From: Macrostomum lignano
Taxonomy: Eukaryota
Direction: 5' to 3'
NCBI GenBank assembly: GCA_002269645.1
Contig: NIVC01000921.1
Location: 1-64,000, forward strand
DNA: 64,000 nucleotides
The notes beneath the pieces were generated by a model. The model saw nothing but the letters and a program-made list of their open reading frames with translations. It was not told the DNA's origin and did no database searches. How positions within the stretch are numbered: position 1 is the first letter of the stretch; every line of letters starts with the position of its first letter. This document shows positions 22,901 to 56,053 of this stretch, piece after piece. A program made the translations under genes and the position numbers.

Positions 22901-25900
22901 TCAGATAAAAGTGTCATCTTTCACACCAACGTGGCATCTCTCAGATCAAAGTGGCGTCTCTCATATCAAAGTGGCGTCGCTCAGATCAAAGTGTCATCTT
23001 TCACACCAACGTGGCATCTCTCAGATCAAAGTGGCGTCTCTCATATCAAAGTGGCGTCGCTCAGATCAAAGTGTCATCTTTCACACCAACGTGGCATCTC
23101 TCAGATCAAAGTGGCGTCTCTCATATCAAAGTGGCGTCGCTCAGATCAAAGTGTCATCTTTCACACCAACGTGGTGTCGCTCAGATCAAAGTGTCATCTT
23201 TCACACCAACGTGGCGTCTCTCAGATCAAAGTGGCACCCCTTAGATCAAATGCGTTCCATCGTGTGTGTAAACTGACATTAATTATGAGGAATTCTTCAA
23301 ATATTTAATATTAAAAAATTCAAAGTCGAAATAGCATCGTTAAAGATTACATAAAACTGCTGTGTATCAGGTCCAGGACGAAGTTCTGACGAGACTTTCA
23401 ATGTTAATTTTTCACCCGTGACAAACCACTGCAGTGGCTGAGTCCCTGTCAGGCTCAGCCAGTGCCGACTATCTGATGCAGCGGCTCCGGCTCAATCACC
23501 AACTCGGCAGAGAGTTCACTGATGCGGCCGCCGCAGCCACGGTGAACGATCTGGCCTCGGCGACTGAGGCGGAGCTACAGATGGTGAGATTCTGACAAAA
23601 ATTGAATTCTTTTTTCTTGTTCGTCTACTTTCAGTAGTTTTCAGGAGCCCACGCTGATTTTTAAATGGGATTTTTCTTTCTTTTACTTTTTCTCTTCTTT
23701 ATCTTTTTTATTTATTTCTTCACGGGATATTTTTTCATAATCGCCTATTTGCAGTACTTTTTATAGATTTTTAAGGACTACTTAACAAGAAAACGGACTC
23801 CTCAGCGCTCGCAGATAGTGCAGAGTTTTTGAAGGCCCAATTACGAATCATGCCTTCTTTGAACAGTTGAGTGTGGGAGGCTGATGTTTTAAAAATGTCT
23901 AGAAACTTGTCTTAAACTTGTCTAGAAATTTTATTTCTCCTCAAATAAAAATTAGAAATTAATGACCGAAGCCATTAAAAACACTCAAATGCGTCATACT
24001 CTTCGCTCCAACCAAACTAGCGATTCGGCTTGCATAAACTCGGTCACCGACGGCGCGTTTTCTGTTGCCTTGACAACGCACAAGCGTTGGGACGACTTCG
24101 GCGACCTCATCATCAACATCATCAGCATCAGCAGCAGCAGCAGCAGCAGCAGCCAATGATGCAGCAGAACGGAGTTCAGCACGGGCGTCAGAGCTCGAAC
24201 CTATCAGCCAGATCTGCCGCTTCATCTGCAACTGCCGCCGCCGCCCTTCAAACCTCCCCATCCTCCTCCTGCCCCTCCTGTTCCTCCTCTGACGACGGTG
24301 ATCACTCATCATCGATGCTCGCGGCCGCTTCGGCGGGCATCGCGAACCGGCGACAGGGTCTTCGAGCAGCGGCGGGGGCAGCGGTGGTAAAGAACAGCAA
24401 AGCGACGGCGCTCACGGAGGTGCTGCCGCGGCAAGAACTGCCGGCTTTCCCGGCTGGCGGCTGCAGCCGCTCGTGGATGGCGGACGGCGCCGCTGGCGGA
24501 GAGGTCGGCGGCCGCCGGGAGCTGTCAGGAGCCGTGGGAGGCGCCAGCTTCGATGACGCGGTGCTGGTGCGATCGCGGTCGATCGACTGTTTGGACGGCG
24601 ACGCTGCAGGCCTGCAGAGGCGGCGGTTGGCATCGGCGGCCTCGGCGGCATTCCGGCCGCTGGTCAGCGAGTCCTGGCCGCACCATCCCGACGTGCTGCT
24701 CCGGGACAGCTTCTCCTACTCAGTGTCCGTGAGTTCCCCGGGGCCTTGACGGATTTGTTAGTTGGGCCATATACTACTGCTTGAGTAGCCAGTCGAAGCC
24801 TAGTAGCTGGCATAAATATTATTTCGCTTGTCATTTTAGTTTACTAACAGTAGTAATATAAGCAAGTTACAAGTAGAAAATTAATTCATTTTCATTGAAT
24901 TCAAGCTTTTGATTGATTTATTATAAAATATTTTTATCAAAATTTCGACTTCTAAAAGTATGATAACATGAGGCTCGATATTAAAAAAATGTTAATGCAC
25001 TGCCTACGTTACTGCATGTAAAAGTGACTTCAGAGAGAGTTGGTAGAATGGTGTCAACTCTCAGAAATTGATGGTAGAATGGCGCCGACTCTCAGTGACT
25101 GGTGGTAGAATGTCGCCAACTATCAGAGATTGGTGGTAGAATGGCGCCAACTCACAAATATTGATGGTAGAATGGCGCCAACTCTCAGAAATTGATGGTA
25201 GAATGGCGCTAACTCTCAAATATTGATGGTAGAATGGCATCAACTCTCAAAACTTAGTAATTAACTCAGGCGAGCCTGCATACGAGTATCGTAACTAGAA
25301 TTCTGAAGACCGAACGACAATATATTGATTAATTATCTCCGAATTCCAGTATCTGGGTTTCCGCCCACTGGCAGACCATACGGACCCGACAGAGACCGCC
25401 CAGGTCATGCAGATGTTCCGCTGCAAGAGTGCCGACATTCTCAAGCTGCCCAGGATTCGTCTGACAGTGTGCTACAGAGGCGTGAAGTTCATCAATCCCG
25501 ATAATGACGTGAGCTGCTGCGGATCCGTTCAGTTTTAACTTGACATTTCAGTTTCAATTGGATGGATTGGAGAATATTACAATTTTGAGAGTTTTAAACA
25601 GTAAAGCTGTTAGGTAAAACTACCAAGCGGAAATTACCAAGAGGAAACTACCAGAGAGCTAGTAAGGGGAAACTACAATAGTAAGGAGGAAGTACCAAGA
25701 GGAAACTACCAGGAGGAAACTACCAAGGGAGCTAGTAAGGAGAAACTACCAAGGGGTAACTACCAAGGAAGCTAGTAAGGGGAAACTACCAAGCGAGCTA
25801 GTAAGGGGAAACTACCAAGAGGAAACTACCAAGGGAGCTAGTAAGGGGAAACTACCAAGGAGCTAGTAAGGGAAAACTACCAAGGGAGCTAGTAAGAGGA

Positions 25901-31032: not shown

Positions 31033-34000
31033 CTAGTCGTCGCAGGACACGTGTGTAAACAAATAAGACATGCTCTCATTATTGTGTATGCGCCGGATGC
31101 CCTCAGCAACCAGCACAGACACGTCTACAGTTTTGATTTTGTGACACTGCATCTTCTGCACCTCGTGCGGCACTGTGTTGGTGACCACTACTTCGTCTAT
31201 GCGACAGTCGTGGGCGGCTATTTTAGTAGCGGCATCGGCGCTCAACAGGCCGTGGGTGGCCATCACGATGACTCGGTAGGCGCCGCGGTCGTGCAGCAGC
31301 TCGGCGGCTCGTACAAACTGTTCAATATCGTCTACCATGTCCTCTACGATGATGGCGATGCGACCGGAGACGTCGCCAACTAGCTGCATGTGAGCCTTCT
31401 CCTTGGCCACAGGCATTGGGAAGAATTTCACTCCGGCATGGTGCAGCGGTCTGGCGTTTGATTGCCGAAATTACAGCATGTAAATTAATGCATGACTAGC
31501 CCTCCTACGCAATCCCTGCCTTACCCTCATAGACAATCCCTGTCTTACCCTCCTAGACAATCCCTGTCTTACCCTCCTACGCAATCCCTGCCTTACCCTC
31601 CTACGCAATCCCTGCCTTACCCTCCTAGACAATCCCTGTCTTACCCTCATAGACAATCCCTGTCTTACCCTCATAGACAATCCCTGTCTTACCCTCATAG
31701 ACAATCCCTGCCTTACCCTCATAGACAATCCCTGTCTTACCCTCCTAGACAATCCCTGTCTTACCCTCCTACGCAATCCCTGCCTTACCCTCATAGACAA
31801 TCCCTGCCTTACCTTCATAGACAATCCCTGCCTTACCTTCCTAGACAATCCCTGTCTTACCCTCATAGACAATCCTTGTCTTACCCTCATAGACAATCCC
31901 TGTCTTACCCTCATAGACAATCCCTGTCTTACCCTCATAGACAATCCTTGTCTTACCCTCATAGACAATCCCTGCCTTACCCTCATAGACAATCCCTGCC
32001 TTACCCTCATAGACAATCCCTGCCTTACCCTCATAGACAATCCCTGTCTTACCCTCATAGACAATCCCTGCCTTACCCTCATAGACAATCCCTGTCTTAC
32101 CCTCATAGACAATCCCTGCCTTACCCTCATAGACAATCCCTGCCTTACCCTCATAGACAATCCCTGCCTTACCCTCATAGACAATCCCTGTCTTACCCTC
32201 ATAGACAATCCCTGCCTTACCCTCATAGACAATCCTTGTCTTACCCTCATAGACAATCCCTGCCTTACCCTCATAGACAATCCCTGCCTTACCCTCATAG
32301 ACAATCCTTGTCTTACCCTCCTAGACAATCCCTGCCTTACCCTCATAGACAATCCCTGCCTTACCCTCATAGACAATCCTTGTCTTACCCTCCTAGACAA
32401 TCCCTGCCTTACCCTCATAGACAATCCTTGTCTTACCCTCCTAGACAATCCCTGTCTTACCCTCCTAGACAATCCCTGTCTTACCCTCCTAGACAATCCC
32501 TGCCTTACCCTCATAGACAATCCCTGCCTTACCCTCCCAGTGGTACCTCCCTAGATAAAACTATCCAAAAAAGCAGTCGAGCACTTGATCAATAATAACG
32601 AAGAATGCAAAGTAAAGAAACAGCATATTCAACTCTACCAGCTATGAAACTATATAATAACTTTAACAATAAAGGCAGATTATTATAATTTATACACGCG
32701 AATAAGTCATCAGTGTAACAAAATAAAAATCCATAAAATGGCAAAGCCTATACTTGAATAACTGCATATGCTACATAGTAACTGTAACGAAATCCTCCCA
32801 ACCTCATTAAGCAAATATAATAGTGAAAGTACAGACTTCAATAATTAAAGCACTATAGTTGCCATGCAATGCAGATAATACGTAAATACCTGTGGCCCAG
32901 ACGGGCGGGCTGTTTTAATCCACGAGTTAGCCTGGAAATATTGGTTCGAAGTTTTACAGTGCTTAATGCACTCAATAGCTACTGACAGGGTTAAATACGT
33001 TTTGCTTAATAATTTTAATGTGCTACATGTAAGTACAAACCATAGTACACAACTCGAAAAACAACAATTAAAAGCGTATTGAATCTACAAACCCGGTACT
33101 TTGTGTATAAGTTTATGTACTTTTAATGTCAATATATGTACTTTAAATCTAAAAATGTACTTTTAATCTAAATTTGTAGTTTGAATCTAATCGATGTACT
33201 TTTATTATAAATCTACGCAGGTATGTACTTTTATTATAAATTTATGTACTTTTAAATCTAAATCTATGTACTTCGAGTCTAAATCTATGTACTTTGAGTA
33301 TAAATCTATGTACTTCGAGCATAAATCTATGTACTTCGAGCATAAGTCTATGTACTTTGAGTATAAATATATGTACTTCGATTCTAAATCTATGTACTTT
33401 AAATCTAAATCCAGACACGCTCTCGCAGTTCGGAACGGATTGAAGGTCCCAGAGAAACACAGAATCAAAGCAATCTAACGCACAGAAAACTATTAGGACA
33501 CTATTTGCAGAAGTACGATAACAAGCAAAACCAAAGCGCAAATTAAGATCCTGCCCGGATCTACCAGCTACTAACCTTCGCTCTTCGACAGCACCTACGC
33601 CGCTAGCGCCACCAACGCCACCAGACGCTCCGGCAGCTTCCAACTGATCAGCCTGCTGCATGGGCGGCGGCGGCGAGTTCCTACCGTCGGCCTGTTCCGA
33701 TTCCGAGTGCTCCTCGCCGTGAATAACGGCCAAGGGCAGCCGGAGCCGTTCAGAATAGGAAGCGGCCCGCTGCATAGCGGCGGCATTCCTGGCCACAATG
33801 ACCGCATTGCGATAATCCGACACGTCGTTCATCACGTATTGGATTAGAAACGAAGACGCTCTCAGATTGTCAATAGGCACGCTGTAGAAGCCTTGAATCT
33901 CTTTCTTATGCAAGTCAACCGTGATCATGCGGCTTAGGCCGGTGTGACAGAATAGCGCGGCTAATAGCCTACTAACGATTGCGCCGCGTTTTCTCATCTT

Positions 34001-34327
34001 ACTCTGCTTACAGTAGGGCAGATAGGGCATGACAACGTTAATAGTGCGAGCGTCGGCGGTTTTACAAGCGTACATCATTATAATGAGCTCCATAATATCG
34101 TTATTAACGTTCTTAGTGCCAGTTTGAATAATAAACACGTCCCTAGATCGCATTGTCTCGTTGATTTCAACACTAGTCTCTCTGTTGCTTTTTTGTAGCA
34201 CGGATACGCTGCCTAGAGGCACGGAGAGGTACCTGGATACCAGGCGGGCGAATTCCGGATGCGAGTTGCCGGCTAGAAGTACCATGCCTTTGGTTGGCAT
34301 GCCCATTGCTGTGGCCTGGCGATTCAT
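31033..34327 (-). CDS. PRPSAP: Phosphoribosyl pyrophosphate synthase-associated protein (PRPSAP1/2-like)
   Basis: Exons 34327-33576 and 31450-31033 (389 aa). [60 protein letters not shown]...[48 protein letters not shown]. The SKMRKRG and DGRxSPP motifs mark the associated protein rather than catalytic PRPS. Confidence 0.92.
31495..32540. repeat. 24-bp minisatellite (CTTACCCTCATAGACAATCCCTGC) in the PRPSAP intron
   Basis: More than 40 copies. Confidence 0.95.
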
Positions 34328-34454
34328 TCTGCCGCTGCAAAGCATCAGTATTGAAGTTGGTTGTGCAGCTGCACTGTGCATATATTTCATACTGCATGCA
34401 TTTAGCACTGATTGCTAAGGACTATCTGTGCTCCAATGATAAATTAATGGGTCT

Positions 34455-39600: not shown

Positions 39601-40075
39601 AATAATATATATAAAGTCACGATGCTCAAAGAATTCCAGTTTAGTATGCACTAACCTTGTTAATATCGTGTTTAAACAGCGTGCACTCGAACTCCGCTTT
39701 CTCAGCCGCTTTAGGCGGCGAAGTCTCGTACACAATAGCCAGGTAGTGCCGGTCAGCCGGGTCGCGGGCAATGTAGGAAATCTTCTCGATTGGCACCTTC
39801 ATCAGGTGGGTCTTGGTCACCACCTCTTCGCCGCTGAATACCTCGATGCCCTGCACGGAGATGTGCACAGACACCATTGGCGCCTGCTTCACGCCGGATT
39901 CTTTTCGCCGAGATTTGCCTTCGCGCATTTTCTCGCTGGCCCGCTGAACAACGTGGATGCCTTTGGCCTCGGCGGCCGGGTACGTGCCCTCGAATTTGCA
40001 CTGGAATGACACGCCGTCGCGTCGGCGAAGATCTTCGTCTGGGTGGAGGCGCTGACTGGATTGGGTGTCGGGCAT
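36603..40075 (-). CDS. ced-6: PTB-domain engulfment/endocytic adaptor, CED-6/GULP-like
   Basis: Exons 40075-39656, 39581-39498, 37894-37727, 37085-36603, all phase 0. PTB: DGVSFQCKFEG...KGIHVVQRA...VSVHISVQGIEV...ISYIARDPADR...MVLTLNQAFDLAY. It is followed by a helical segment (QVDIYRSRLKQLSEQVP) and a low-complexity tail with NPF, DSFF and FDPLK endocytic-type motifs. A Dab-like assignment is not excluded. Confidence 0.75.
37105..37610. repeat. (CTGA)n microsatellite, intronic
   Basis: Direct reading. Confidence 0.95.
37935..39485. repeat. 23/26-bp G-rich minisatellite (GGGGTGCTGTAGGATGGGGATTC), intronic
   Basis: More than 60 copies. Confidence 0.95.
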
Positions 40076-40184
40076 GGCTGCGGATGGAAGTTGCGGCAAA
40101 ATGAACCGATTAGACTGTGCGCTAGTATAACAGTAACTGCACCTGCATGATGAGGCTGAGAAGAACAGATGGAAAATTGCGAGG

Positions 40185-40790
40185 GGAGGAAGGAGAAAGA
40201 GAGGAGAGGGACGGGAAGAGAGAAGAGGGAAGAGAGGAGAGGGACGGGAAGAGAGGAGAGGGACGGGAAGAGAGAAGAGGGAAGAGAGGAGAGGGACGGG
40301 AAGAGAGGAGAGGGAAGAGAGGAGAGGGACGGGAGAGAAGAGAGGGAAGAGAGGAGAGGGACGGGAAGAGAGGAGAGGGACGGAAAGAGAGAAGAGGGAC
40401 GGGAAGAGAGGAGAGGGAAGAGAGGAGAGGGACGGGAAGAGAGGAGAGGGACGGGAAGAGAGGAGAGGGACGGGAAGAGAGGAGAGGGACGGGAAGAGAG
40501 GAGAGGGACGGGAAGAGAGGAGAGGGACGGGAAGAGAGAAGGGACGGGAGGAGAGGGACGGGAAGAGAGGAGAGGGATGGGAAGAGAGGAGAGGGACGGG
40601 AAGAGAGGAGAGGGGCGGGAAGAGAGGAGAGGGACGGGAAGAGAGGAGAGGGACGGGAAGAGAGGAGAACGGAAAGAGAGGAGAGGATGGAGAAGGAGGA
40701 GGGATGAGGGAGAAAGGAGAGTGAGGAGTAAGAGAGGAGAGGGAGAGGCGGAGGGAGGTGAGAGGGAGAGAGGAGGGGAAGGGAAAAGAG
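40185..40790. repeat. 19-bp purine minisatellite (AGAGGAGAGGGACGGGAAG)
   Basis: Tandem copies upstream of the CED-6-like ATG. Confidence 0.9.
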
Positions 40791-42063
40791 AGAGCCAAAT
40801 TATAGAGTAGAGGTTTAGGCCACATGTACTCAGAAAAACACAAATTAGTATTGACGTTGCAAAAAACACAATATTGTAATTAGCTCTTACCCATAATTCA
40901 ATATTTTACTTCTTAAATTTGTTTTTTAATCATGCAAGGCACAGAAAATAAAACTATAAGACAATAGAAGCAACAATTATAACACTAATTTTGACTAGCC
41001 TTATATACTTAGTTTAATAATACATATTATTTGTACATGACTAAGTTCTGAATTAACCTTGATAACAAAAATACGAGAATAAATAACAAAAACGCGCATA
41101 CGTGTATATATTGTAAAGATTGAACCTCTATATTTGTTTAAATATAACTGCTGTGAGATTTTCATACACAAAAAGGCGCTTTACGCAATGAAACCATGCA
41201 GTTTTAAAAGAGAAAGAAATCATTACAAAAATATTTATCATCTGTTCTTTTCTGTCGAACCAGACATTTAAAAATTGAAACATATCAGCCAAAATCTTAA
41301 ATACTACTAAATCAGAGAAGTAGCATTTAAAAGTCTCGGTAATAATCTGGAAGAAAAAAAAGGACGGAAGCTACAGACAGAAACAAATTCTCCAATGAAA
41401 TCTATTATTCTTGATATTATGAATACATAAACAGCTAGATAAACACAAAGGAAAAATCTCTAGCTGAGTCTATTCATGTGTAAAAAGGCAACAATAGCAA
41501 TAATTAGTAGATAATTCAGTCAGCTGAGTTCACTCAGTTTTCTATATTACGATTACAGGGGCACCATGGATGACCCTCAGGTCGCCAGGAAGACACGGCA
41601 AGGTTCAACTGAAATGCGACAGCCAATAATAGGAGCGATTGTAATATATTGTTGGGTGGCTCTATTGTTCTACTTAATTTACTGATTTATTTATTAAGCT
41701 GCGGTTTCATATTTAAGATTAGATGATTAAAAGAAATCAAACTTGAGTGTCTCAATTGTACAGAAAGGAGAATTTCTCGTTTTGTTTGAAGTGTAATATG
41801 TTCAATTTTTGCATATTGAGCTGTTGCAATTTGCCATATTTTGTAGCGGATGTCCCCAAATAGTATTATTTTAATTGACTCCTAGCTGTTCGTCAATATT
41901 ACGCCCTGACCTCTAGATTGAATATAGACAGAAATGAGCTTTGCGCACAGGCAAATGAAGGTCAGTGTCAGCATGTTCTGTATCGGATTACACCATGGGC
42001 TCAGGCGCTTTGTCTCTTTTAAAGCAACTTCTGTCGATTTTCAAGGACTTTCAATTGGCCATA

Positions 42064-44882: not shown

Positions 44883-47340
44883 TTAACCACTCCGTACAGT
44901 AGCTAAAAGGCGCACAATTGTGTAAAAAACTAACCACGACTGATCGACGGCCGCTTCAGTCACCTCGTGGTCGTCAATGAACAAAGTCTGTATAATGCCT
45001 GTGCGCCGCTTGCCGCTAGACACGGCACGGATGAAGCAGGCATGATCGCCTACTGTAAAGTGCGTCTCAGTGCCTTCGTCTGTGAACTCGCCCTGGGGAT
45101 GTGGGATATTGTGGGAATGGGGTCTTCGTCAGGCTGATAAAGTAGCAAGACTTTCTTCTATAGTAAATCAAATCCGTCTAAACATTAAGGCTCAAGGCAT
45201 GTGAGGATGGCGATGACCCAAGAACTGAGGATCTGGGAGGCTGGTGGAACAGAAACTGAGGATCTGGGAGGCTGGTGGAACAGAAACTGAGGATCTGGGA
45301 GGCTGGTGGAACAGAAACTGAGGATCTGGGAGGCTGGTGGAACAGAAACTGAGGATCTGGGAGGCTGGTGGAACAGAAACTGAGGATCTGGGAGGCTGGT
45401 GGAACAGAAACTGAGGATCTGGGAGGCTGGTGGAACAGAAACTGAGGATCTGGGAGGCTGGTGGAACAGAAACTGAGGATCTGGGAGGCTGGTGGAACAG
45501 AAACTGAGGATCTGGGAGGCTGGTGGAACAGAAACTGAGGATCTGGGAGGCTGGTGGAACAGCAACTGAGGATCTGGGAGGCAGGTGGAACAGCAAATGA
45601 GGATCTTGGAGGAGACAACAGTCTGGGATCTGACAAAACTGGCCAGAAATAAAATGATAGGGATCAAGATAGAGCCCAGGAAACTCACAGCTGTCTCAAC
45701 GACTTTTCCATCAACGTAGACATCAAGCGAATCCTTCTCCAGTACAATTCTCACGAACTCGCCATCAATAATAGGCAGCCAGCATTTGAGAATGCGCGCC
45801 TGGTTCTCGCTGAAGCTCTGCACGGATTTGCCATTCACCAACAGTTTATAATGATAATTAAAATCGTCTGCTGCGACGATTTCAATTGTGCAGGGAGTGC
45901 TGCCGATTTTGAAATGCTCAATGCCAACTAGCTTGAACATGAAGTCTTCGCGCTTGATGCACTGGCGGAGAAATGCGGAGCACGAGGGAGGGCATCTTAG
46001 ATAGCGTTCAGACAGAATCTCGCACAAGCTCGAACCTTCACAATATCTAACCTTCACAAGCTCTAACCTTCACAAGCTCGAACCTTCACAAGATCTAACC
46101 TTCACAATCTCTAACCTTCACAATCTCTAACCTTCACAATCTCAAACATTCACAATCTCAAACATTCACAATCTTTAACATTCACAATCTCGAACATCCA
46201 CAATCTCAAACCTTCACAATCTCAAACATTCACAATCTCAAACATTCACAATCTCGAACATTCACAATCTCGAACCTTCACAATCTCGAACCTTCACAAT
46301 CTCAAAAATTCACAATATTTAACCTTCACAAGCTCAAACCTTCACAAGCTCAAACCTTCACAATCTTAAACATTCACAATCTCAAACATTCACAATCTCG
46401 AACCTTCACAAGCTCGAACCTTCACAATCTCGAACCTTCACAATCTTAAACATTCACAATCTCAAACATTCACAATATTTAACCTTCACAAGCTCAAACC
46501 TTCACAAGCTCAAACCTTCACAATCTCGAACCTTCACAATCTCAAACATTCACAATCTCAAACATTCACAATTTCCAACCTTCACAATCTCGAACATTCA
46601 CAATCTTGAACTTGAACATTCACAATCTCTAACCTTCACAATCTCTAACATTCACAATTTCCAACCTTCACAATCTCTAACATTCACAATCTCTAACATT
46701 CACAATCTCAAACATTCACAATCTCTAACATTCACAATCTCTAACATTCACAATCTCGAACATTCACAATCTCTAACCTTCACAATCTCTAACATTCACA
46801 ATCTCTAACATTCACAATCTCTAACATTTACAATCTCTAACCTTCACAATCTCGAACATTCACAATCTCGAACATTCACAATCTCGAACATTCACAATTT
46901 CTAACCTTCACAATCTTTAACCTTCGCAATCTCAAACATTCACAATCTCAAACCTTCACAATATTTAACCTTCACAAGCTTGAACATTCACAATCTCTAA
47001 CCTTCACAATATTTAACCTTCACAAGCTCGAATCTTCACAATCCCTAACCTTCAAAATCTCTAACCTTCTCTAACCTTTCGGTTTCCAAGCTTATGGTTG
47101 TGACGTCCGACAAACAAGACTTTCGACAATGTGAAATTTCGAGCTTGTGAAAGCGATCTAGCATTTTTTGGGATTGAATTAAGACACGGGACTTCGGCAT
47201 TCAAACCTTACCTCTCCGTTAAGAAAGATGGCCCTCCGGCCCGAGGTCGTACCATGGTCAAACTGCACAACATGCACCCTATCGCTCAGAGGCACCTCCC
47301 ATCTGGCGCTCATGACTTTTTTCTGGCCGTTTTCTTCCAT
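44883..47340 (-). CDS. FAIM: Fas apoptotic inhibitory molecule 1
   Basis: Exons 47340-47212, 45961-45689 and 45092-44883 (or 45092-44935 spliced to 44311 to form the stop codon). WEVPLSDRVHVVQFDHGTTSGRR, FMFKLVGIEHF, RIVLEKDSLDVYVDGKVVETAGEFTDEGTETHF, RAVSSGKRRTGII. Confidence 0.92.
45222..45605. repeat. 30-bp minisatellite (AACTGAGGATCTGGGAGGCTGGTGGAACAG-type) in FAIM intron 2
   Basis: About 12 copies. Confidence 0.95.
46025..47075. repeat. 16-bp minisatellite (AACATTCACAATCTCT) in FAIM intron 1
   Basis: More than 60 degenerate copies. Confidence 0.95.
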
Positions 47341-47894: not shown

Positions 47895-48311
47895 CTAATA
47901 ACCGCCTCGACCGCCGCCTCGACCACCACCGCGACCGCCTCCGCCGCCGCCTCGACTGCCACCGCCGCCGCCTCGTCCGCCGCGGAATCCGCCCCGGCCG
48001 CGGTGCATCATAGTCTTGCCGCGGCCCATGCCTAAGCCTTTAGTGCCGGTAGTTCGTTTAAACATTGGCGCATTTTTAAGCATGTCGGGCAGAATGAAGA
48101 ATCGAGCTTTTGAGCCGCGCAGGAAAATGTTTTCCAGATGAGCAACGCGACCGTCGCGGAATGTGACCGTGACGTCCGACATCTGGCAGTTCATATTCTC
48201 CTCGGCTTCTACTAGCATGCCGCGGTACATCTCGCCTGTGTCCATCTCGCATGTGATCACGTGACCTTCGGCTTCGTGCAACAGTTTAGATGGAACTCCT
48301 AGCAAGGCCAT
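47895..48311 (-). CDS. SNRPD3: Small nuclear ribonucleoprotein Sm D3 (single exon, 138 aa)
   Basis: [18 protein letters not shown]...[19 protein letters not shown]...[34 protein letters not shown] plus an RG/GR-rich tail. The true ATG is at 48311; the ORF track starts 5 codons earlier. Confidence 0.96.
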
Positions 48312-48494
48312 GCTGTTGACAAGCATGCATTCACATATTTAATTAAGGGCCAATTAATTATCAGGAGCTAATGGAAAACATCTTCTTTCTATGATAATGA
48401 ACTATGTTATTAAAGTGTACTTTAAAATAGCTGGATATTTTTATCAATTATAGATTGTGCTTTTCGTCTACCACTTTTTTGGATACACCTTTGG

Positions 48495-50170
48495 GCTTAT
48501 GACTCAATGAGATTTATGGGCTATGACTCAATGAGACTTTTTGGGACTTATGGGCTGCGACTCAATGAGACTTTTAAGCTGACTCAATCAGACTTTTAAG
48601 CTGACTCAATCAGACTTTTGAGCTGACTCAATCAGACTTTTTGAGCTGACTCAATCAGACTTTTGAGTTGACTCAATCAGACTTTTGAGCTGACTCAATC
48701 AGACTTTTTGAGTTGACTCAATCAGACTTTTGAGTTGACTCAATCAGACTTTTGAGTTGACTCAATCAGACTTTTGAGTTGACTCAATCAGACCTTTTGA
48801 GCTGACTCAATCAGACTTTTGAGCTGACTCAATCAGACTTTTTGAGTTGACTCAATCAGACTTTTGAGCTGACTCAATCAGACCTTTTGAGCTGACTCAA
48901 TCAGACTTTTGAGCTGACTCAATCAGACTTTTGAGCTGACTCAATCAGACTTTTGAGTTGACTCAATCAGACTTTTGAGCTGACTCAATCAGACTTTTGA
49001 GTTGACTCAATCAGACTTTTGAGCTGACTCAATCAGACTTTTGAGTTGACTCAATCAGACTTTTGAGCTGACTCAATCAGACTTTTGAGTTGACTCAATC
49101 AGACTTTTGAGTTGACTCAATCAGACTTTTGAGCTGACTCAATCAGACTTTTGAGTTGACTCAATCAGACTTTTGAGCTGACTCAATCAGACTTTTGAGT
49201 TGACTCAATCAGACTTTTGAGCTGACTCAATCAGACTTTTGAGTTGACTCAATCAGACTTTTGAGCTGACTCAATCAGACTTTTGAGTTGACTCAATCAG
49301 ACTTTTGAGTTGACTCAATCAGACTTTTGAGCTGACTCAATCAGACTTTTGAGTTGACTCAATCAGACTTTTGAGCTGACTCAATCAGACTTTTGAGTTG
49401 ACTCAATCAGACTTTTGGGACTTTTGGGCTATGAATCAATGATAGACTTTTGAGCTATGAATCGATGATAGACTTTTGGGCTATGAATCAATGATAGACT
49501 TTTGGGCTATGAATCAATGATAGACTTTTGGGCTATGAATCAATGATAGACTTTTGGGCTATGAATCAATGATAGACTTTTGAGCTATGAATCAATGATA
49601 GACTTTTGGGCTATGAATCAATAATAGACTTTTGGGCTATGAATCAATGATAGACTTTTGGGCTATGAATCAATAATAGACTTTTGGGCTATGAATCAAT
49701 AATAGACTTTTGGGCTATGAATCAATGATAGACTTTTGGGCTATGAATCAATAATAGACTTTTGGGCTATGAATCAATGATAGACTTTTGGGCTATGAAT
49801 CAATAATAGACTTTTGGGCTATGAATCAATGATAGACTTTTGGGCTATGAATCAATAATAGACTTTTGGGCTATGAATCAATGATAGACTTTTGGGCTAT
49901 GAATCAATAATAGACTTTTGGGCTATGAATCAATGATAGACTTTTGGGCTATGAATCAATGATAGACTTTTGGGCTATGAATCAATGATAGACTTTTGGG
50001 CTATGAATCAATGATAGACTTTTGGGCTATGAATCAATGATAGACTTTTGGGCTATGAATCAATGATAGACTTTTGGGCTATGAATCAATGATAGACTTT
50101 TGGGCTATGAATCAATTATAGACTTCTGGGCTATGAATCGATGATAGACTTTTGGTCTATGACTCAATGA
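48495..50170. repeat. Two related adjacent arrays: 22-bp (GACTCAATCAGACTTTTGAGCT) to ~49420, then 26-bp (GACTTTTGGGCTATGAATCAATGATA)
   Basis: Tandem copies sharing the GACTTTTG and TGA(C/A)TCAAT cores. Confidence 0.95.
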
Positions 50171-51312
50171 TATTCCGAGGAAATCTACTTGTTTTCATAT
50201 AAACTGCTAATAAAAATGCTTTTAATAACTTAGACGAAACAGAACCGACTGCCGAATCCAAAAATTGAAACGTGTACAAAACACACGCAAGTGTATATTA
50301 TGTTTATTAATATGAGTAACTGAGGATTTACTTTTTGCAAGTGAAATTACAGAAGGCTGGTGGGCGGGTGGAGCAAATAGCCAGGGAAATTAAATTTGCT
50401 GCATTTAATAGAAAAAGCACAATTTTTTCAACATGATCAACGAACATGACCGCTTCTGTCAAGCTTTAATAAAGATCAAGTTTACTGTCAATGCAGATTA
50501 TTAGCTTAGTGTAGTAAGGAGGGCAATAGATATAAGATATATATAATATGAATACGAGACAATAATTGGTTATAATGACATAATTAACAGTTCAAAAGCA
50601 TCAATTAATAAGCGGTCATCAGTGTATCATATAAATTTCTAAACCTGTTAGAACTATAATTAGCGCCTCTAAGGACTTGATAACACTGAACTATGATCTT
50701 ACTAAATCACTATGCAAATAACTACCAAAGCTACAGACACCACCGCAACTGCCGCTCTCTCTATCTGCCTGGTTCAACTGCATCAAAGAAGGGAAGAGAA
50801 AATATTAGTTATAAAAAACTCTTGACAGCCAGAAGAAGAAGATCTAAAAAACAGCAATAGAAATGGAAACAAATTAAACAGTTTAATTCAGTAGAGAAAC
50901 CGCACGAACAGACACGGTAAACTGGGACAAACAATAGAAGAAAAAATAGAAATTGCAGCACCGATACACGCTGTTTTCATAATTAATAATAATAATTAGG
51001 CTTGGGGGAGACTGCTAATGGCTTAACAATAGATAACTATATGAAGACATTGTACTGGCCAAAATATTACCGAGCCCCTCAATTAACATTTATAAATCAG
51101 TAATATTTGTAACAACTAATAAGAAGTGTGCGCTACTAGAACACAAACAACACCCCAGAAGCAAGCGCAAGGGACAGGGAGTTAACATTAACACTACAAT
51201 TAGTTAAAAAGCATATTATTACAATAGCAAGTCCTCAGAATTTGTTTATAGATTTAAGGCACAATTAAAGCAAACTAGATAAAGAAAAGGTGCGCCAACA
51301 ATTCATAGAGAC

Positions 51313-51319
51313 AGGCAAG

Positions 51320-51374
<55 letters not shown>

Positions 51375-51400
51375 ACAGACAGACAGACAGACAGACAGGC

Positions 51401-51441
<41 letters not shown>

Positions 51442-51784
51442 GGCAGACAGACAGACAGGCAGGAAGGCAGACAGACAGACAGACAGACAGACAGGCAGAC
51501 AGACAGACAGGCAGACAGACAGGCAGGAAGGCAGACAGACAGACAGACAGACAGGCAGACAGACAGACAGGCAGGAAGGCAGACAGGCAGGCAGACAGAC
51601 AGACAGACAGACAGGCAGACAGACAGACAGACAGGCAGACAGACAGACAGACAGACAGGCAGACAGACAGACAGACAGACAGACAGGCAGACAGACAGAC
51701 AGGCAGGAAGGCAGACAGGCAGGCAGACAGACAGACAGACAGACAGACAGACAGGCAGGCAGACAGACAGACAGACAGACAGGC

Positions 51785-51821
<37 letters not shown>

Positions 51822-51833
51822 GGCAGACAGACC

Positions 51834-51885
<52 letters not shown>

Positions 51886-51990
51886 GCCAGACAGGCAGGC
51901 AGACAGACAGACACTAAGACACTAAGACAGGCAGACAGGCAGGCAGACAAACAGACAGACAGACAGACAGGCAGACCAGACAGACAGAGA
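51313..51990. repeat. (CAGA/CAGG)n microsatellite
   Basis: Direct reading. Confidence 0.95.
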
Positions 51991-53788
51991 GTCAGAGACA
52001 AAGACAGAGTACATTAATGAAATGAAGGCCAAAATATTCACCCCTGTACACAGTTGCGCATGAAAAGAACAGTGCGAATTAATGCATATCTCGTATACAT
52101 TTGCTATAAAATTTTAAGCAGCGTACGCGCATTCTTCACATCGGTGCATAGAATGGAACTATATAAACAAAAGCATTTTTAATTACAAGTGCAAATTTCG
52201 AATACTTAAAGTAAACATCTCTGGTATTCGATTCAAGTTATAAGGTGAATTTATGAATTATTTTGTGTCCATTTCCATTCTGATAACTGGAAGATTATAC
52301 TATAACTTTCTACATTTTTAAAGAACATTAAAACTCATAGAACACGAAATCCAACGATTCATGCTAACTACTTCGACCTATACTACTAACAGTATTACAT
52401 GACATCATCTGATGCAAAAAGCTGCGAAAATTATCTACTAATAGCTTCTATTGCTTTGCTTCATCATAATTATTATCTGTATTCAGGTTATATAAAATAT
52501 TACGCAAGACCTAGCTAAGCTAAGCCTCATTTCCTAACCAGTAATAAATAGGTGTACGAACTACGGACGGCAGATAAGGAGATGAGCTAAATAAACTTGA
52601 ACAATACAATACACCCGACGTAGATTCAGTTGAGCCACAGATAGTAGAATAACTAGATGTATCACTCGCAAAAAATACGCTGATGGACTCTGTTTTGAGT
52701 AGCAAAATTAGCATTTTTGCATTAAATCTTACAAACTATTTACAAATTTTTGAAGCTGCAACAATCGTCTTTTGCTTCCTACAAGTAGACCCATTAAAGT
52801 AGTATCTTCACCTTGTTTAAAGCTGCACCCAAATCCAGTGAGTGTGCATTGCCAGCAAAAGAGAAAGGGTGTGGCGCCCCAGCCAGACCCATAAACAGTT
52901 GGGCTTTCCTCTTTCCCGCTTGTGACTCACTTTGACCTCTTACTGCTCTCTCATTGGCTGAGCGAGATCGGGTCTACCCCTTAAGCCTGAGCTTCGTCCG
53001 TCTGATTTTGACCTCTCTCCTTACTGCTCTCTTATTGGCTGAGCTAGGTTGGGCCTGTCCCCGTAGGCTGTGCTTCGTTTGTCTTGCGTTTACTTGTGTA
53101 CATCGAGTTAATTGCTAATTTTTCATTCTTAACCCATTATGCCTCCGAGACCGCAAGCCTCGTAAAAGGAAAGGAAATATTAGCTGCCAAATTAAATTTA
53201 AGCGACAATGCGCAAACAAACTACTGAAAAAAGTAGACACTCTACTTTTACACAGGTTTAAATTGCGAGTGACATAATATCTGGTTACTCTAGTATCTAT
53301 GAGTCAAACAAACGAATCGCATTGGCGAGAAGGAAGCTGGAAAAAGATCTTTCACACATAGAAGGATAATTAAGATTATCATTACCGTAAAGAAACCATG
53401 GTGTCGCATCACTCCACTCAGAAGTGGGTCGATAAAAATGGAGAAACCGAGAATGATATTTATGCATATATGGTTAGGAGTTTATATAGTTAAGTCTGTA
53501 TGAATTCGCTATTTTACTAGTAAAACAAACAATGGGGAAACCACCGTGCTGCTGCCAATGAACATTTTAATGATCAATAAACAGAGAGACAAACAGACAG
53601 ACTCTAGCGAGCGTAGGCCTACAAACAGCGGAGAGATATAAAGATAACAGAGAGAAAAGATGCCATCATAAGCTAAAAAACAAACAAATAACAAAACTAA
53701 TAATTAGCTAATGTAAAGCATGGATAACAGAATTGGTATCTCTAACAATATATATATAGAGAGAAATCGGTGTGTATGTATAAAAACG

Positions 53789-56053
53789 TCAGTCCGCTGC
53801 ACCAGCGGGCGGCAGTGCGGACAGGCGGAAGGCGAACACGCCAATTCTGAGGCCGCACAGGCCGGCAGACGCGGAGGAGCTGGCCAGTGTAGAGCGAAGT
53901 TCCGCCGCCTCGCCGGCAACGCAAGCTGAAGCGGAGGATCTGGGAAAAGCGATGCGCAAACAATTCTCGCCAGCTGTTGGACCGGTTAGCGCAGTAAGAA
54001 ACGGTGCGCCGCAGGCTGTTAGAGATCGTTGAATAGCGCCATTGAGCTGAACAGATTCAACTAAGCAGGGCCCGTCGGATAGCCAGCAGTGCATTGAAAT
54101 TGGATCCGGGCAAGGCTGACGGCGCATCAAGGCCGAGCAGGGACGCTGACGGCAGTGCAGCAGGGCGACGGCGTGGCCATATTTGGAGGCCTCCTCTTCG
54201 GGCAGGCGAAAGCGCACCTGGCACACAAGGCCTGGCTGTGGTCGCAGGTAGCGTGGAGCAAATAATAGCGCCGCAGGAGCGAAGCCTAGCCTAGCCAGAT
54301 GATCGGCCAGATGGTCGTGCATAGTCCGGCACAGATGGCCAACGTACAATTGCAGTACGGCTGCACTTTGAGGACAGGCGCGCCTGGCGTACCGTAGCGG
54401 AGTTTGACCTTCGCAGGTTTCTACACCAAAATCGACACCGCCAAGGCTGCACAATGCGTCTACTAAATGCGGCTTGCGCAGCTTAATAGCACGCTGCAAA
54501 GTGGAATTGCCGGCCGGACAAAGCAAATTGGGATCGGCGCCGGCTAGCAACAGGCGATGAACTAATGCCGGCGAGTCTCGTTCAACTGCCAGCATTAGCA
54601 GTGTTAGACCGGACTCGGGGGAGCGACAATCAATGTCTATAGTCTCTGATAGGTGAGCCACGGTGCCAGCCGTATCTAGTAACAAATCAACTATGCAAGC
54701 GTGACCGCGGGCCACGGCTAAACAGAGAAGCCGCTGCAAGTCTGCTATAGTCAGCTGCGGCTCCTGCTGGCTGACGGTCCGGCTAACAGCCGGCCAGTCG
54801 CCTCGTTCAACCGCTCGGCAGAGCAGCGGCCAGGAAAGCGGAGGCGGCCGGTTTGGCGGCAGTCGGGCAGCCTGTCCGGCCAGGTGAGCGCGCAGCAGTT
54901 CAGCCTGATTAGCTACGTAGCGAAAGTCGGCCGCTGTCTCTTCGATTGGCGTCGTTGAGACCGACGCTGACGATGATGTCGACGGCTGCTGTTGTTGCTG
55001 CGGCGGAGGCGGCGGAGTCGGCGTCGAGGACACCGCCGAGGCGGTCGCGGACGCCGCTTTGTCTGATCGTTCATCGGAGGCGTCGCCAGCGGCTGAAGCT
55101 GCGGCCGAGGCCGAGGCAGAGGCTGTCGCAGCGGTGGTTGAGTCTCGCTTAGCGGAACCGAGCAAATCCGCCAGCAGCGGCGACTGATGCTGCGATGGCT
55201 TTGTTGATGACGCCGACGAAGCGGATTGCTGCGTAGGCGTTGGCGGTTGGACTGACTCTCCAACCGTGGCGGCAGACGCTATTGTTGAGTCTTTCAAAAC
55301 TTGTCCGCCGCTTCCAGTTGTTGCAGCGGCAGCCGAGACAGTCGGTTTGCCTTCGATTTCTAAAGTGCTCGACGAGCCAATTGAGTTAGCGAAACTGCTG
55401 CCGCCTTCGGAATTGTTTGAATTGCCCTCCTCCCCGGTTGTGTCCTCGGCCGATGCGTCCTCGCTCTCTCGGCCGACGCTAACTCCGCTGCCACCGTTCA
55501 GCCGACGCCGGGATTTTGGCCGATTTTCGTCCAGACTGTCCACCAATTTGTTAGTCTTTGCCGACCCACCGCCAGTTGTTGGCAAATGCATTGCTGCCGC
55601 CGCTGCCGTTGTTGAGGAGCCTTGATCCCATCGCTTTGGCGCTGGACGCTTTCTGCTGCCGCTGCTATTGCTGCTGTTACTATTGCCGCCAGTCGATGCC
55701 CGATTGCTGCTGCTGCCGCTGCTGAGCTTACTGGCTCGAGCCGATCGGAAGGCTTGAATCATATCGGATACAACTGTTAAATTGTCCTCAGGCTCCCAGG
55801 TGTCATTCGATGGCGGATAATTTTTCCAGCGAACTTTAAAATAAGACATGCCATTCTCAGTTTTCTCGGCCAGAATTTTGCCAACAACATATAAATCGTC
55901 GCCATTGTTTGATGCTGATGGCGGGGATGGTGCACTTTTAGCGCCAAGTCCTCCACTGACGCCGCCCGCCTTGACTGCGGAGGCTGCTGCAACTGCCGCC
56001 ACTGTGCCTGAGGCGGCGCCGCAATTGCTAGGCCGCCTGGCTGTTGTCTCCAT
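53789..56053 (-). CDS. MPHOSPH8: M-phase phosphoprotein 8-like chromodomain-ankyrin protein (single exon, 754 aa)
   Basis: N-terminal chromodomain (YVVGKILAEK...YFKVRWKNYPPSNDTWEPEDNL), a long low-complexity linker, ankyrin repeats (GLTLLMLAVERDSPALVHRLLLAGADPN, GNSTLQRAI, GQTPLRYA), and a C-terminal domain GPCLVESVQLN...AGENCLRIAF...IGVFAFRL. That last domain resembles, from memory, the MPP8 C-terminus (GPCSVQAVVLN...AGPNKLFIRL...IGAYRV). Confidence 0.8.
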   Translation of the reverse strand: METTARRPSNCGAASGTVAAVAAASAVKAGGVSGGLGAKSAPSPPSASNNGDDLYVVGKILAEKTENGMSYFKVRWKNYPPSNDTWEPEDNLTVVSDMIQAFRSARASKLSSGSSSNRASTGGNSNSSNSSGSRKRPAPKRWDQGSSTTAAAAAMHLPTTGGGSAKTNKLVDSLDENRPKSRRRLNGGSGVSVGRESEDASAEDTTGEEGNSNNSEGGSSFANSIGSSSTLEIEGKPTVSAAAATTGSGGQVLKDSTIASAATVGESVQPPTPTQQSASSASSTKPSQHQSPLLADLLGSAKRDSTTAATASASASAAASAAGDASDERSDKAASATASAVSSTPTPPPPPQQQQQPSTSSSASVSTTPIEETAADFRYVANQAELLRAHLAGQAARLPPNRPPPLSWPLLCRAVERGDWPAVSRTVSQQEPQLTIADLQRLLCLAVARGHACIVDLLLDTAGTVAHLSETIDIDCRSPESGLTLLMLAVERDSPALVHRLLLAGADPNLLCPAGNSTLQRAIKLRKPHLVDALCSLGGVDFGVETCEGQTPLRYARRACPQSAAVLQLYVGHLCRTMHDHLADHLARLGFAPAALLFAPRYLRPQPGLVCQVRFRLPEEEASKYGHAVALLHCRQRPCSALMRRQPCPDPISMHCWLSDGPCLVESVQLNGAIQRSLTACGAPFLTALTGPTAGENCLRIAFPRSSASACVAGEAAELRSTLASSSASAGLCGLRIGVFAFRLSALPPAGAAD

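What the first reader, a model, noticed from the sequence alone, without database searches (positions are those of the whole stretch)
53789..56053. Invertebrate MPP8 (HUSH complex) homologue encoded by an intronless gene
Seen: complete chromodomain-linker-ankyrin-C-terminal domain architecture in one 2,265-nt exon. The methyl-lysine cage looks intact (Y at 55891-55889; W and Y in RWKNY). Established: MPP8 reads H3K9me3 and, with TASOR and Periphilin, forms HUSH, which silences retroelements and long intronless transcripts. It has been characterised mainly in vertebrates and is not known from fly or worm models. Inference: a HUSH-like silencing system may operate in this repeat-laden invertebrate, and the intronless gene could be a retrocopy or be subject to its own surveillance (feedback).
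Basis: partly seen in the sequence, partly recalled or inferred. Interest (0 to 1): 0.8.

Follow-up and report, generated by a model that had tools for sequence, protein, structure and literature searches.

The report
Flatworm MPP8-like gene, intronless paralogue
This is a real, intact, selectively maintained gene of the flatworm Macrostomum lignano that encodes a protein built like human MPP8 (the methyl-histone reader of the HUSH silencing complex), and it is an intronless sister copy, probably an old retrogene, of a five-exon paralogue in the same genome.

Summary
Window 53789-56053 (-) is one uninterrupted 754-codon ORF with an N-terminal chromodomain, a ~290-aa low-complexity linker, ankyrin repeats and a conserved C-terminal domain (CTD). 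The window is Macrostomum lignano contig NIVC01000921.1.

MPP8 identity is well supported:
- The chromodomain's best solved-structure match is human MPP8.
- A profile of the flatworm CTD hits only one PDB chain, the human MPP8 CTD (weakly).
- AlphaFold models of the C-terminal half, for this gene and for its paralogue, both have the human MPP8 CTD crystal structure 8QFB as top Foldseek hit, 4-6 orders of magnitude ahead of generic ankyrin proteins.

The same genome holds a ~46%-identical paralogue with 4 introns, so the intronless copy is most likely an old retrogene. No poly(A) remnant or target-site duplication survives. Three near-identical syntenic copies differ by 10 synonymous and 3 nonsynonymous changes, which indicates purifying selection.

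Not tested: whether TASOR-like or Periphilin partners exist in this genome, H3K9me3 binding, and any silencing or self-surveillance. The gene is already in GenBank as a 'hypothetical protein'.

Verdict: new member of a known family, outside the vertebrates to which HUSH is usually confined. Moderate interest.

The parts
53789..56053 (-). Complete single-exon CDS (754 aa plus stop) of the MPP8-like gene. It is identical to the GenBank-annotated protein on M. lignano contig NIVC01000921.1.
55745..55891 (-). Chromodomain (aa 55-103). Aromatic cage: Y55 (55889-55891), W76 (55826-55828), Y79 (55817-55819). E87 corresponds to human E91. N83 sits at the position of human D87.
   Evidence: Pfam Chromo E 3.2e-12. 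Best PDB hits are human MPP8 chromodomain chains, 42.9 bits against 35.4 for HP1. Alignment.
54869..55726 (-). Low-complexity Ser/Ala/Gln-rich linker (aa ~110-395), presumably disordered. It carries short motifs conserved with the paralogue (SRKRxAxxxWD, RRRxNG, LLxxLLxSAK, ELxRAHL).
   Evidence: Alignment. No Pfam domain. Human MPP8 residues 125-535 are likewise unstructured (PMC7618375).
54377..54832 (-). Ankyrin-repeat block (aa ~408-559): four full helix pairs plus the first helix of a fifth repeat.
   Evidence: Pfam Ank_2/Ank/Ank_3/Ank_5. AF2 model with pLDDT 63-92 (mostly 76-92) over this block.
54290..54373 (-). Long 28-residue helix (aa ~561-588) that completes the fifth ankyrin repeat. 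It is the counterpart of human MPP8 helix alpha10.
   Evidence: Model helix 166-193. HMMER alignment of this stretch to 8qfb_B residues 111-211. Description of alpha10 in PMC7618375.
53816..54283 (-). C-terminal beta-rich domain (aa ~591-746, about 9 predicted strands), the putative PINIT-like beta-sandwich. It contains a low-complexity insertion (aa ~705-735) that the paralogue lacks.
   Evidence: Secondary structure (low pLDDT, 29-59). Foldseek full-length match to 8QFB. Conservation with the paralogue.
53942..54073 (-). Conserved CTD core motif GPCxVxSVxLN...Q...GEN.LR (aa 661-704). This is the stretch that aligns to human MPP8 'GPCSVQAVVLNDKFQLPVFL...'.
   Evidence: It is the only PDB hit of the CTD profile, 8qfb_B, and appears again.

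Best explanation
What it is: a functional M. lignano gene for an MPP8-family chromatin reader.

Shown:
- The protein has an N-terminal HP1-type chromodomain with the three aromatic methyl-lysine cage residues.
- A long low-complexity linker follows, as in human MPP8.
- The C-terminal module is five ankyrin repeats whose last helix is elongated, followed by a beta-rich domain. Its closest solved structure is the human MPP8 CTD.
- The gene is one of two MPP8-like paralogue families in this genome. This family has no introns in the CDS and the other has four.
- The intronless gene is present in three near-identical syntenic copies and evolves under purifying selection.

Inferred:
- The chromodomain binds H3K9me2/3-type ARK(me)S/T marks.
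- The ankyrin/PINIT-like module docks onto the SPOC-DomI region of a TASOR-like scaffold. The protein would then anchor a HUSH-like silencing complex on H3K9-methylated chromatin and help spread or maintain the mark.
- The intronless copy arose by retroposition of a spliced mRNA of the intron-containing paralogue lineage. This happened long enough ago that identity has fallen to about 46% over aligned positions and the poly(A) tail and target-site duplications have decayed.
For: ORF and domains.

Chromodomain:
- The best PDB sequence hits are three human MPP8 chromodomain chains (E 2e-10 to 2e-9). HP1 follows at 4e-8 and CDYL at 5e-7.
- The paralogue shows the same ranking (47.1 bits against 40.8).
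- Cage residues Y55, W76, Y79 and E87 are aligned.

CTD, sequence level:
- The flatworm CTD profile hits one PDB chain out of 177,635 at E<=10. That chain is 8qfb_B (MPP8), and the match is collinear.
- With the ankyrin repeats included, 8qfb_B ranks second in the PDB (E 0.0012), with two collinear stretches.

CTD, structure level:
- The AF2 model shows five helix pairs, a 28-residue helix and about nine strands. This is the layout published for the human MPP8 CTD (PMC7618375).
- In Foldseek, 8QFB chains take ranks 1-4 (E 4.5e-13, TM-score on target 0.59, 363-375 aligned columns). The next hits are generic ankyrin proteins at about 5e-7 with 160-200 columns.
- The paralogue's model replicates this (1.3e-9 against 1.5e-5).

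Paralogy and introns:
- The window and P0002 come from the same assembly, GCA_002269645.1.
- P0002 maps to 5 exons separated by gaps of 336-1518 nt.

Functionality:
- Three copies share LSM and FAIM1 neighbours.
- The CDS is 99.5% identical among copies while the flanks are about 93-98% identical.
- Changes are 10 synonymous and 3 nonsynonymous, P = 2e-4.
- GenBank gene models of this assembly derive from a transcriptome assembly (PMC5730564), which implies transcription.

Partner plausibility: TASOR-like DUF3715-SPOC-DomI proteins are reported in invertebrates (PMC10578480).
Against: - CTD sequence similarity to human MPP8 is weak (E 0.28 alone, 0.0012 with the ankyrin repeats; 17-19% identity in Foldseek).
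- The exhaustive HMMER search with the CTD profile found nothing outside flatworm copies.
- Both models rest on alignments of 2-3 sequences. pLDDT is only 29-59 over the beta domain, and TM-scores are moderate (0.59 and 0.37).
- I had no full-length vertebrate or other invertebrate MPP8 sequences, so no true reciprocal-best-hit test or phylogeny was done. The PDB served as a proxy.
- The acidic cage position is Asn (His in the paralogue), and human F813 at the TASOR interface aligns to Ile (Arg in the paralogue).
- No partner protein was looked for in this genome.
- No poly(A) tract or target-site duplication flanks the gene, so retroposition is inferred only from the intron contrast.
Confidence: 0.75

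Rival explanations
1. It is a lineage-specific chromodomain-ankyrin fusion that only resembles MPP8 by convergence. It reads methyl-lysine but is not an MPP8 homologue and has nothing to do with HUSH.
For: - The CTD has no significant sequence match outside flatworms in 1.8 billion representatives.
- The PDB match is E 0.28.
- The beta domain is modelled at low confidence.
- Chromodomains and ankyrin repeats are both promiscuous modules.
Against: Three independent parts all point to the same human protein, in the same order along the chain:
- the chromodomain;
- the last ankyrin repeats with the elongated helix;
- the beta domain with the GPCxVxxVxLN motif.

Foldseek separates 8QFB from all other ankyrin proteins by 4-6 orders of magnitude in two separate models. 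cpSRP43 appears neither among the 60 listed rows nor in the top 50. CDY-family chromodomains score lower, and (from my own knowledge, not tested here) CDY proteins lack ankyrin repeats.
Confidence: 0.1
2. It is a true MPP8 homologue, but in flatworms it works without a HUSH complex. For example, it could be a stand-alone H3K9me reader that recruits H3K9 methyltransferases or other partners through its ankyrin/CTD module.
For: - The human MPP8 chromodomain also binds methylated ATF7IP, GLP, G9a and SETDB1 peptides, and HUSH-independent roles are reported (PMC7618375; PMC13643101).
- The TASOR-contacting residue F813 is not conserved.
- No partner was demonstrated here.
Against: - The CTD, which in human exists to bind TASOR SPOC-DomI, is the best conserved part between the two flatworm paralogues.
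- TASOR-like proteins with the DomI domain are reported in invertebrates (PMC10578480).
Confidence: 0.25
3. The intronless state comes from DNA-level duplication followed by gradual intron loss (or the introns of the other paralogue are gains), not from retroposition.
For: - There is no poly(A) remnant within 800 nt of the stop and no flanking direct repeats.
- Two of the four paralogue intron sites coincide with 11-12-aa indels, which shows that exon boundaries have been remodelled.
Against: - All four introns are missing at once, while M. lignano genes average 4.9 introns (PMC5730564).
- The two paralogues lie on different contigs.
- Loss of retroposition hallmarks is expected at about 46% protein identity.
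Confidence: 0.25
4. It is a dead processed pseudogene that happens to keep an open frame.
For: It is intronless and has a GC-rich body in AT-richer flanks.
Against: - The 754-codon ORF is intact in three copies.
- The CDS is more conserved than the flanks.
- The ratio of 10 synonymous to 3 nonsynonymous changes gives P = 2e-4.
- Domains are far better conserved with the paralogue than the linker is.
- The gene model comes from a transcriptome-based annotation (PMC5730564).
Confidence: 0.03

Closest known systems
Human MPP8 (MPHOSPH8), HUSH subunit; structures 3LWE/3QO2/9H77 (chromodomain) and 8QFB (CTD)
   Same: - The order of parts is the same: N-terminal chromodomain with a three-aromatic cage, a long disordered linker, five ankyrin repeats with an elongated last helix, and a C-terminal beta domain.
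- It is the best sequence and structure match for each part.
   Different: - Identity is 44% in the chromodomain and only 17-19% in the CTD.
- The acidic cage position is Asn.
- F813 aligns to Ile.
- The beta domain carries a low-complexity insertion.
- The protein is 754 aa against 860 aa (construct numbering in PMC7618375).
- The CDS is intronless. The human gene is, from my own knowledge, multi-exon.
- Partner binding is untested.
M. lignano paralogue BOX15_Mlig020555g1 / Mlig006785g1 (P0002, P0030)
   Same: - Same genome and same architecture.
- 46% identity over aligned positions.
- The same CTD motifs (HCWLSDGPC, LRIGVFAFRL).
- Also best matched by MPP8.
   Different: It has five coding exons and four introns, different linker content, and lies on different contigs. 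It is the likely parental lineage of the intronless copy.
C. elegans CEC chromodomain proteins
   Same: Some have chromodomains described as highly similar to MPP8 (PMC7649781).
   Different: According to that review, CECs diverge from MPP8 outside the chromodomain. The flatworm protein keeps the ankyrin/CTD module.
Siz/PIAS PINIT domains
   Different: There is no sequence similarity and no RING domain. I did not test the flatworm domain against PINIT structures on its own.
cpSRP43 and CDY/CDYL
   Same: They contain chromodomains. cpSRP43 also has ankyrin repeats.
   Different: - cpSRP43 is absent from the listed hit rows.
- CDYL chromodomains score about 11 bits lower than MPP8.
- CDY proteins carry a crotonase-like domain, not ankyrin repeats (my own knowledge).

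Membership tests
MPP8 family | N-terminal HP1-type chromodomain with an aromatic methyl-lysine cage (human F59, W80, Y83) | tested here: met
   Pfam Chromo E 3.2e-12. Y55, W76 and Y79 align to the human cage.
MPP8 family | Chromodomain closer to MPP8 than to the HP1/CBX, CDY or SUV39 chromodomains | tested here: met
   Among PDB chains, MPP8 scores 42.9 bits, HP1 35.4 and CDYL 31.9. For the paralogue the figures are 47.1 against 40.8. The margin is modest and the PDB is only a proxy for a full reciprocal search.
MPP8 family | Acidic residue completing the cage (an aspartate in human MPP8, PMC7618375) | tested here: inconclusive
   Human D87-D88 (my numbering, counted from F59) aligns to N83-D84 in the window protein and to H-D in the paralogue. 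One Asp is kept and the other is not. Which one forms the cage was not verified here.
MPP8 family | C-terminal five ankyrin repeats whose last helix (alpha10) is about twice the normal length | tested here: met
   The AF2 model has ten helices in five pairs, the last one 28 residues long. The ankyrin part has pLDDT 63-92 (mostly 76-92) and the long helix about 56-61. HMMER aligns this stretch to 8qfb_B.
MPP8 family | PINIT-like beta-sandwich packed against alpha10 at the C-terminus | tested here: inconclusive
   About nine strands are predicted. The full-length Foldseek match to 8QFB ranks first by 4-6 orders of magnitude, and the only PDB sequence hit of the CTD is the MPP8 CTD. However, pLDDT over this part is 29-59 and the domain was not tested on its own.
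MPP8 family | Orthology by reciprocal best hit or phylogeny against complete proteomes | not tested
MPP8 family | Binding of H3K9me3 and H3K9-like methylated peptides | not testable with these tools
   Needs peptide pull-down or ITC.
HUSH complex | A TASOR(-like) scaffold with SPOC-DomI in the same genome that binds the MPP8 CTD | not testable with these tools
   No searchable M. lignano proteome was available. Supplements of the M. lignano papers hold no such names. The literature reports TASOR-like proteins in invertebrates generally (PMC10578480).
HUSH complex | A Periphilin RNA-binding subunit and SETDB1/MORC2 effectors | not tested
   Same limitation as above.
HUSH complex | Transcription-dependent H3K9me3 silencing of long intronless transcription units | not testable with these tools
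   Needs knockdown or knockout with RNA-seq and H3K9me3 profiling.
Retrogene (functional retrocopy) | Intronless CDS while a paralogue in the same genome has introns at internal positions | tested here: met
   The window ORF is continuous. The paralogue has 4 introns of 336-1518 nt. Two of the junctions map to well-aligned, uninterrupted positions in the window protein (aa 239/240 and 470/471).
Retrogene (functional retrocopy) | 3' poly(A) remnant and flanking target-site duplications | tested here: not met
   None within 800 nt downstream. There are no flanking direct repeats. This is expected for an old event, so it weakens the call but does not exclude it.
Retrogene (functional retrocopy) | Evidence of function (intact ORF, purifying selection, expression) | tested here: met
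   Three intact copies, with 10 synonymous and 3 nonsynonymous changes, P = 2e-4. The gene model comes from a transcriptome-based annotation (PMC5730564).

The most novel reading that the evidence does not exclude
Macrostomum lignano runs a genuine HUSH-like complex (MPP8-like plus TASOR-like plus a Periphilin-like RNA binder). That would show HUSH predates vertebrates and was lost in flies and nematodes. The reader subunit has also been duplicated by retroposition, so one paralogue is itself a long (2.3 kb) intronless transcription unit. That is exactly the kind of target human HUSH silences, which would set up either a feedback loop or a specialised (for example germline or neoblast) HUSH variant.
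Probability: 0.15. Interest if true: 0.75.

Novelty: new member of a known kind. Interest (0 to 1): 0.45.

Why it matters
The HUSH literature describes the complex as vertebrate-specific (PMC7532188, PMC10915761) and notes that MPP8 has no fly or nematode orthologue (bioRxiv 10.1101/2021.11.29.466909). One study finds TASOR-like proteins across metazoa (PMC10578480).

A flatworm protein with the full MPP8 architecture, including the TASOR-docking module, supports an older, pre-vertebrate origin of at least the MPP8-TASOR pair. I found no paper that links MPP8 with Platyhelminthes.

M. lignano is also a practical system for testing this. It has transgenesis (PMC5730564), and I believe RNAi works in it (my own knowledge, not checked here). 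More than half of its genome is repetitive, with 21% LTR retrotransposons. Whether intron-dependent self/non-self discrimination exists outside vertebrates could therefore be tested directly.

The retrogene aspect is a neat but secondary twist.

Tried and rejected
1. Word-indexed homologue search with the full protein and with the C-terminal half. The first returned only the query itself and one paralogue. The second was swamped by generic ankyrin proteins. Neither was useful for family placement.

2. Search with the human MPP8 chromodomain to obtain full-length MPP8 sequences. It returned only short chromodomain fragments, so no profile-profile comparison with a vertebrate MPP8 family was possible.

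3. Exhaustive HMMER search with the CTD profile. It found only flatworm copies plus two spurious repeat proteins (P0026 and P0027; P0026 was inspected).

4. Retroposition hallmarks. There is no poly(A) tract and no target-site duplication.

5. Supplements of the M. lignano transcriptome and genome papers, and of the DUF3715 paper, searched for MPHOSPH8, TASOR, FAM208A, PPHLN1, MORC2, SETDB1 and flatworm names. Nothing is held.

6. cpSRP43-like or CDY-like identity was rejected.

7. My first assumption was that P0002 was an orthologue from another species. This was corrected when one search showed the window is M. lignano itself.

8. Transposable-element context. Among the ten longest other ORFs the Pfam hits are cellular domains (PRPS, FAIM1, PTB/PID, ankyrin). 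The one exception is a weak, stretch-less Integrase_Zn hit on ORF 22116-23276 (+), which I did not follow up.
Full report
**1. Observation**

The ORF list shows a single ATG-to-stop frame of 754 codons at 53789..56053 on the minus strand, exactly as reported.

Pfam finds two domains:
- Chromo, aa 55-103, E 3.2e-12, 46.6 bits against a gathering score of 25.1.
- Ankyrin repeats, Ank_2 E 3e-12, best stretch aa 486-559.

Y55 is encoded at 55889-55891, and W76 and Y79 sit in the RWKNY motif. They align to human MPP8 F59, W80 and Y83. Human E91, which contacts the +1 Ser/Thr of the bound peptide (PMC7618375), is E87 here.

One qualification applies. The acidic residue that completes the human cage lies in the pair D87-D88 (my numbering, counted from F59). 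This pair aligns to N83-D84 here and to H-D in the paralogue. So the cage is intact for the three aromatics but not necessarily for the fourth wall.

**2. Source and copies**

The exact protein is encoded on contig NIVC01000921.1 of assembly GCA_002269645.1, and window coordinates equal record coordinates. The organism is the free-living flatworm Macrostomum lignano.

Two further copies with near-identical protein sequence (BOX15_Mlig014748g1 and BOX15_Mlig017043g1) lie on other contigs. They also have uninterrupted 2,265-nt ORFs and the same downstream neighbours: an LSM-like gene and FAIM1. This fits the known redundancy of this assembly (PMC5730564).

All copies are named only 'hypothetical protein' or 'Chromo domain-containing protein'.

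**3. Is it MPP8-like?**

Three parts of the protein were tested separately.

(a) Chromodomain.
- By phmmer against all PDB chains, the three best hits are human MPP8 chromodomain chains (E 2.3e-10 to 1.8e-9, 40-43 bits).
- These are ahead of HP1 (35.4 bits), CBX5 and CDYL.

(b) C-terminal domain (CTD), sequence level.
- A profile was built from aa 551-754 plus the paralogue's CTD.
- At E<=10 it hits exactly one of 177,635 distinct PDB sequences. That sequence is 8qfb_B, 'M-phase phosphoprotein 8'.
- The match is in the collinear C-terminal position: GPCLVESVQLN... in the window protein against GPCSVQAVVLND... in human MPP8. E is only 0.28.
- With the ankyrin repeats added, 8qfb_B ranks second in the PDB (E 0.0012), behind an 11-repeat ankyrin protein. 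It matches in two collinear stretches: the last ankyrin repeats plus the long helix, and the beta domain.

(c) Fold.
- An AlphaFold2 model of aa 396-754 has mean pLDDT 61. The ankyrin part is at 63-92 and the beta part at 29-59.
- It shows ten helices in five pairs, the last one 28 residues long, followed by about nine strands.
- This is the published layout of the human MPP8 CTD: five ankyrin repeats, a double-length helix alpha10 and a PINIT-like beta-sandwich (PMC7618375).
- In Foldseek against the PDB, the 8QFB chains take ranks 1-4. The best has E 4.5e-13, a TM-score of 0.59 on the target and 375 aligned columns (363-375 across the four chains).
- The next hits are generic ankyrin proteins at about 5e-7, covering 160-200 columns.
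- A separate model of the paralogue gave the same top hit: 1.3e-9 against 1.5e-5 for the runner-up. That model is poorer, with a TM-score of 0.37.

cpSRP43 appears in none of the listed hit rows. CDY-family chromodomains score lower.

Weak points:
- The alignments behind the models hold only 2-3 sequences.
- The beta domain is modelled at low confidence.
- The exhaustive HMMER search with the CTD found no relatives outside flatworm copies.
- I could not obtain full-length MPP8 sequences from other animals for a phylogeny.

**4. The intronless point and the paralogue**

The only close relative, P0002 (BOX15_Mlig020555g1, 780 aa), comes from the same genome. It is therefore a paralogue, not an orthologue.

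It aligns over the whole length. Identity is 46% over aligned positions and is highest in the chromodomain, the ankyrin repeats and the CTD.

tblastn places its coding sequence in five blocks on its contig, separated by 591, 1169, 336 and 1518 nt. The window gene has none of these interruptions. Two of the junctions (aa 245/246 and 485/486 of P0002) map to well-aligned positions in the window protein, aa 239/240 and 470/471.

M. lignano genes average 4.9 introns (PMC5730564). The simplest reading is that the intronless gene is a retrogene derived from the intron-bearing lineage.

The classical hallmarks are absent. There is no poly(A) tract within 800 nt downstream of the stop and no flanking direct repeat. 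That is expected at this divergence, but it leaves stepwise intron loss as a live alternative.

**5. Is it functional?**

- The three intronless copies differ at 13 sites, 10 synonymous and 3 nonsynonymous. The expected synonymous fraction is 0.27, giving a binomial P of 2e-4.
- The CDS is 99.5% identical among copies, while the flanks are about 93-98% identical.
- GenBank models for this assembly come from a genome-guided transcriptome (PMC5730564), which implies transcription.
- A dead pseudogene is therefore very unlikely.

**6. Mechanism**

Shown: the domain anatomy described above.

Inferred from human MPP8 (PMC7618375, PMC7532188):
- The chromodomain binds H3K9me2/3-type marks.
- The ankyrin/PINIT-like module docks on the SPOC-DomI region of a TASOR-like scaffold.
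- The protein thereby anchors a silencing complex on methylated chromatin.

The CTD is the best-conserved part between the two paralogues, which suggests a conserved partner. TASOR-like DUF3715-SPOC-DomI proteins are reported in invertebrates (PMC10578480).

I could not search this genome for TASOR, Periphilin, MORC2 or SETDB1. The supplements of the M. lignano papers do not list them. Human F813, a validated TASOR-interface residue, aligns to Ile here and to Arg in the paralogue. That could reflect co-evolution or a different partner.

The self-surveillance idea is untested speculation.

**7. Comparison and novelty**

HUSH is described as vertebrate-specific (PMC7532188, PMC10915761). MPP8 is described as lacking fly and nematode orthologues (bioRxiv 10.1101/2021.11.29.466909). 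C. elegans CEC proteins share only the chromodomain (PMC7649781). No paper in the library pairs MPP8 with Platyhelminthes.

I therefore file this as a new, un-named member of the known MPP8 family in a flatworm, with a retrogene twist. The gene itself is already in the databases. I expect, from my own knowledge, that MPP8-like proteins are automatically annotated in other invertebrates, so I rate interest as moderate.

**8. Context**

The neighbours are ordinary cellular genes: LSM, FAIM1, PRPS and a PTB/PID-domain gene. The repeat content near the gene is tandem: (AGAC)n and two minisatellites. The only transposon-related hint among the longest ORFs is a weak Integrase_Zn hit on ORF 22116-23276, which was not followed up.

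Noticed in passing
window 51309-52008: An (AGAC)n microsatellite of about 175 copies. It produces the spurious 'CLSVCLSV...' ORFs on both strands.
   Followed up: yes
window 48559-49417 and 49419-50172: Two adjacent minisatellites (22-nt unit x39 and 26-nt unit x29) lie between the MPP8-like gene and the LSM gene. The blastn ladder against L003/L004 suggests the array differs between the three homeologous copies.
   Followed up: partly
window 33242-34408 (-), 45185-46057 (-), 39641-40843 (-), 4407-5201 (+), ~47895-48317 (-): The neighbouring ORFs carry ordinary cellular domains: ribose-phosphate pyrophosphokinase, FAIM1, PTB/PID, ankyrin repeats and an LSM gene.
   Followed up: partly
window 22116-23276 (+): This 386-aa ORF gave only weak, stretch-less Pfam hits. 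They include Integrase_Zn (E 2.6e-05, 24.6 bits against a cutoff of 22.6), a possible trace of a retroelement integrase.
   Followed up: no
L001 6178/6770 and 9813/11332 (paralogue introns 1 and 4); window aa ~176 and ~611: Two of the paralogue's four exon junctions coincide with 11-12-aa segments that the intronless copy lacks. This suggests exon-boundary remodelling, or retroposition from an alternative isoform.
   Followed up: no
window 54900-54930 approx. (aa ~383-391, motif NQAELLRAHL) and other linker motifs: Short linker motifs are conserved between the paralogues: SRKRxAxxxWD, RRRxNG, LLxxLLxSAK and ELxRAHL. The last lies just upstream of the first ankyrin repeat, where human MPP8 residues 536-562 bind the TASOR SPOC domain (PMC7618375).
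   Followed up: no
window 53816-53950 approx. (aa ~705-735): A Ser/Ala-rich low-complexity insertion sits inside the C-terminal beta domain and is absent from the paralogue. It is modelled as a spurious helix at low confidence.
   Followed up: no
window 54001-56000 versus flanks: The CDS is 59% GC (GC3 57%), against 39-49% in the flanks and 46% for the whole window. The paralogue's exons are 53% GC.
   Followed up: partly
P0025 (UniRef A0A1I8GI69, 670 aa): An isoform or model of the intron-containing paralogue lacks part of the linker and about 30 aa at the start of the beta domain. It could be an alternative splice form or an older mis-annotation.
   Followed up: no
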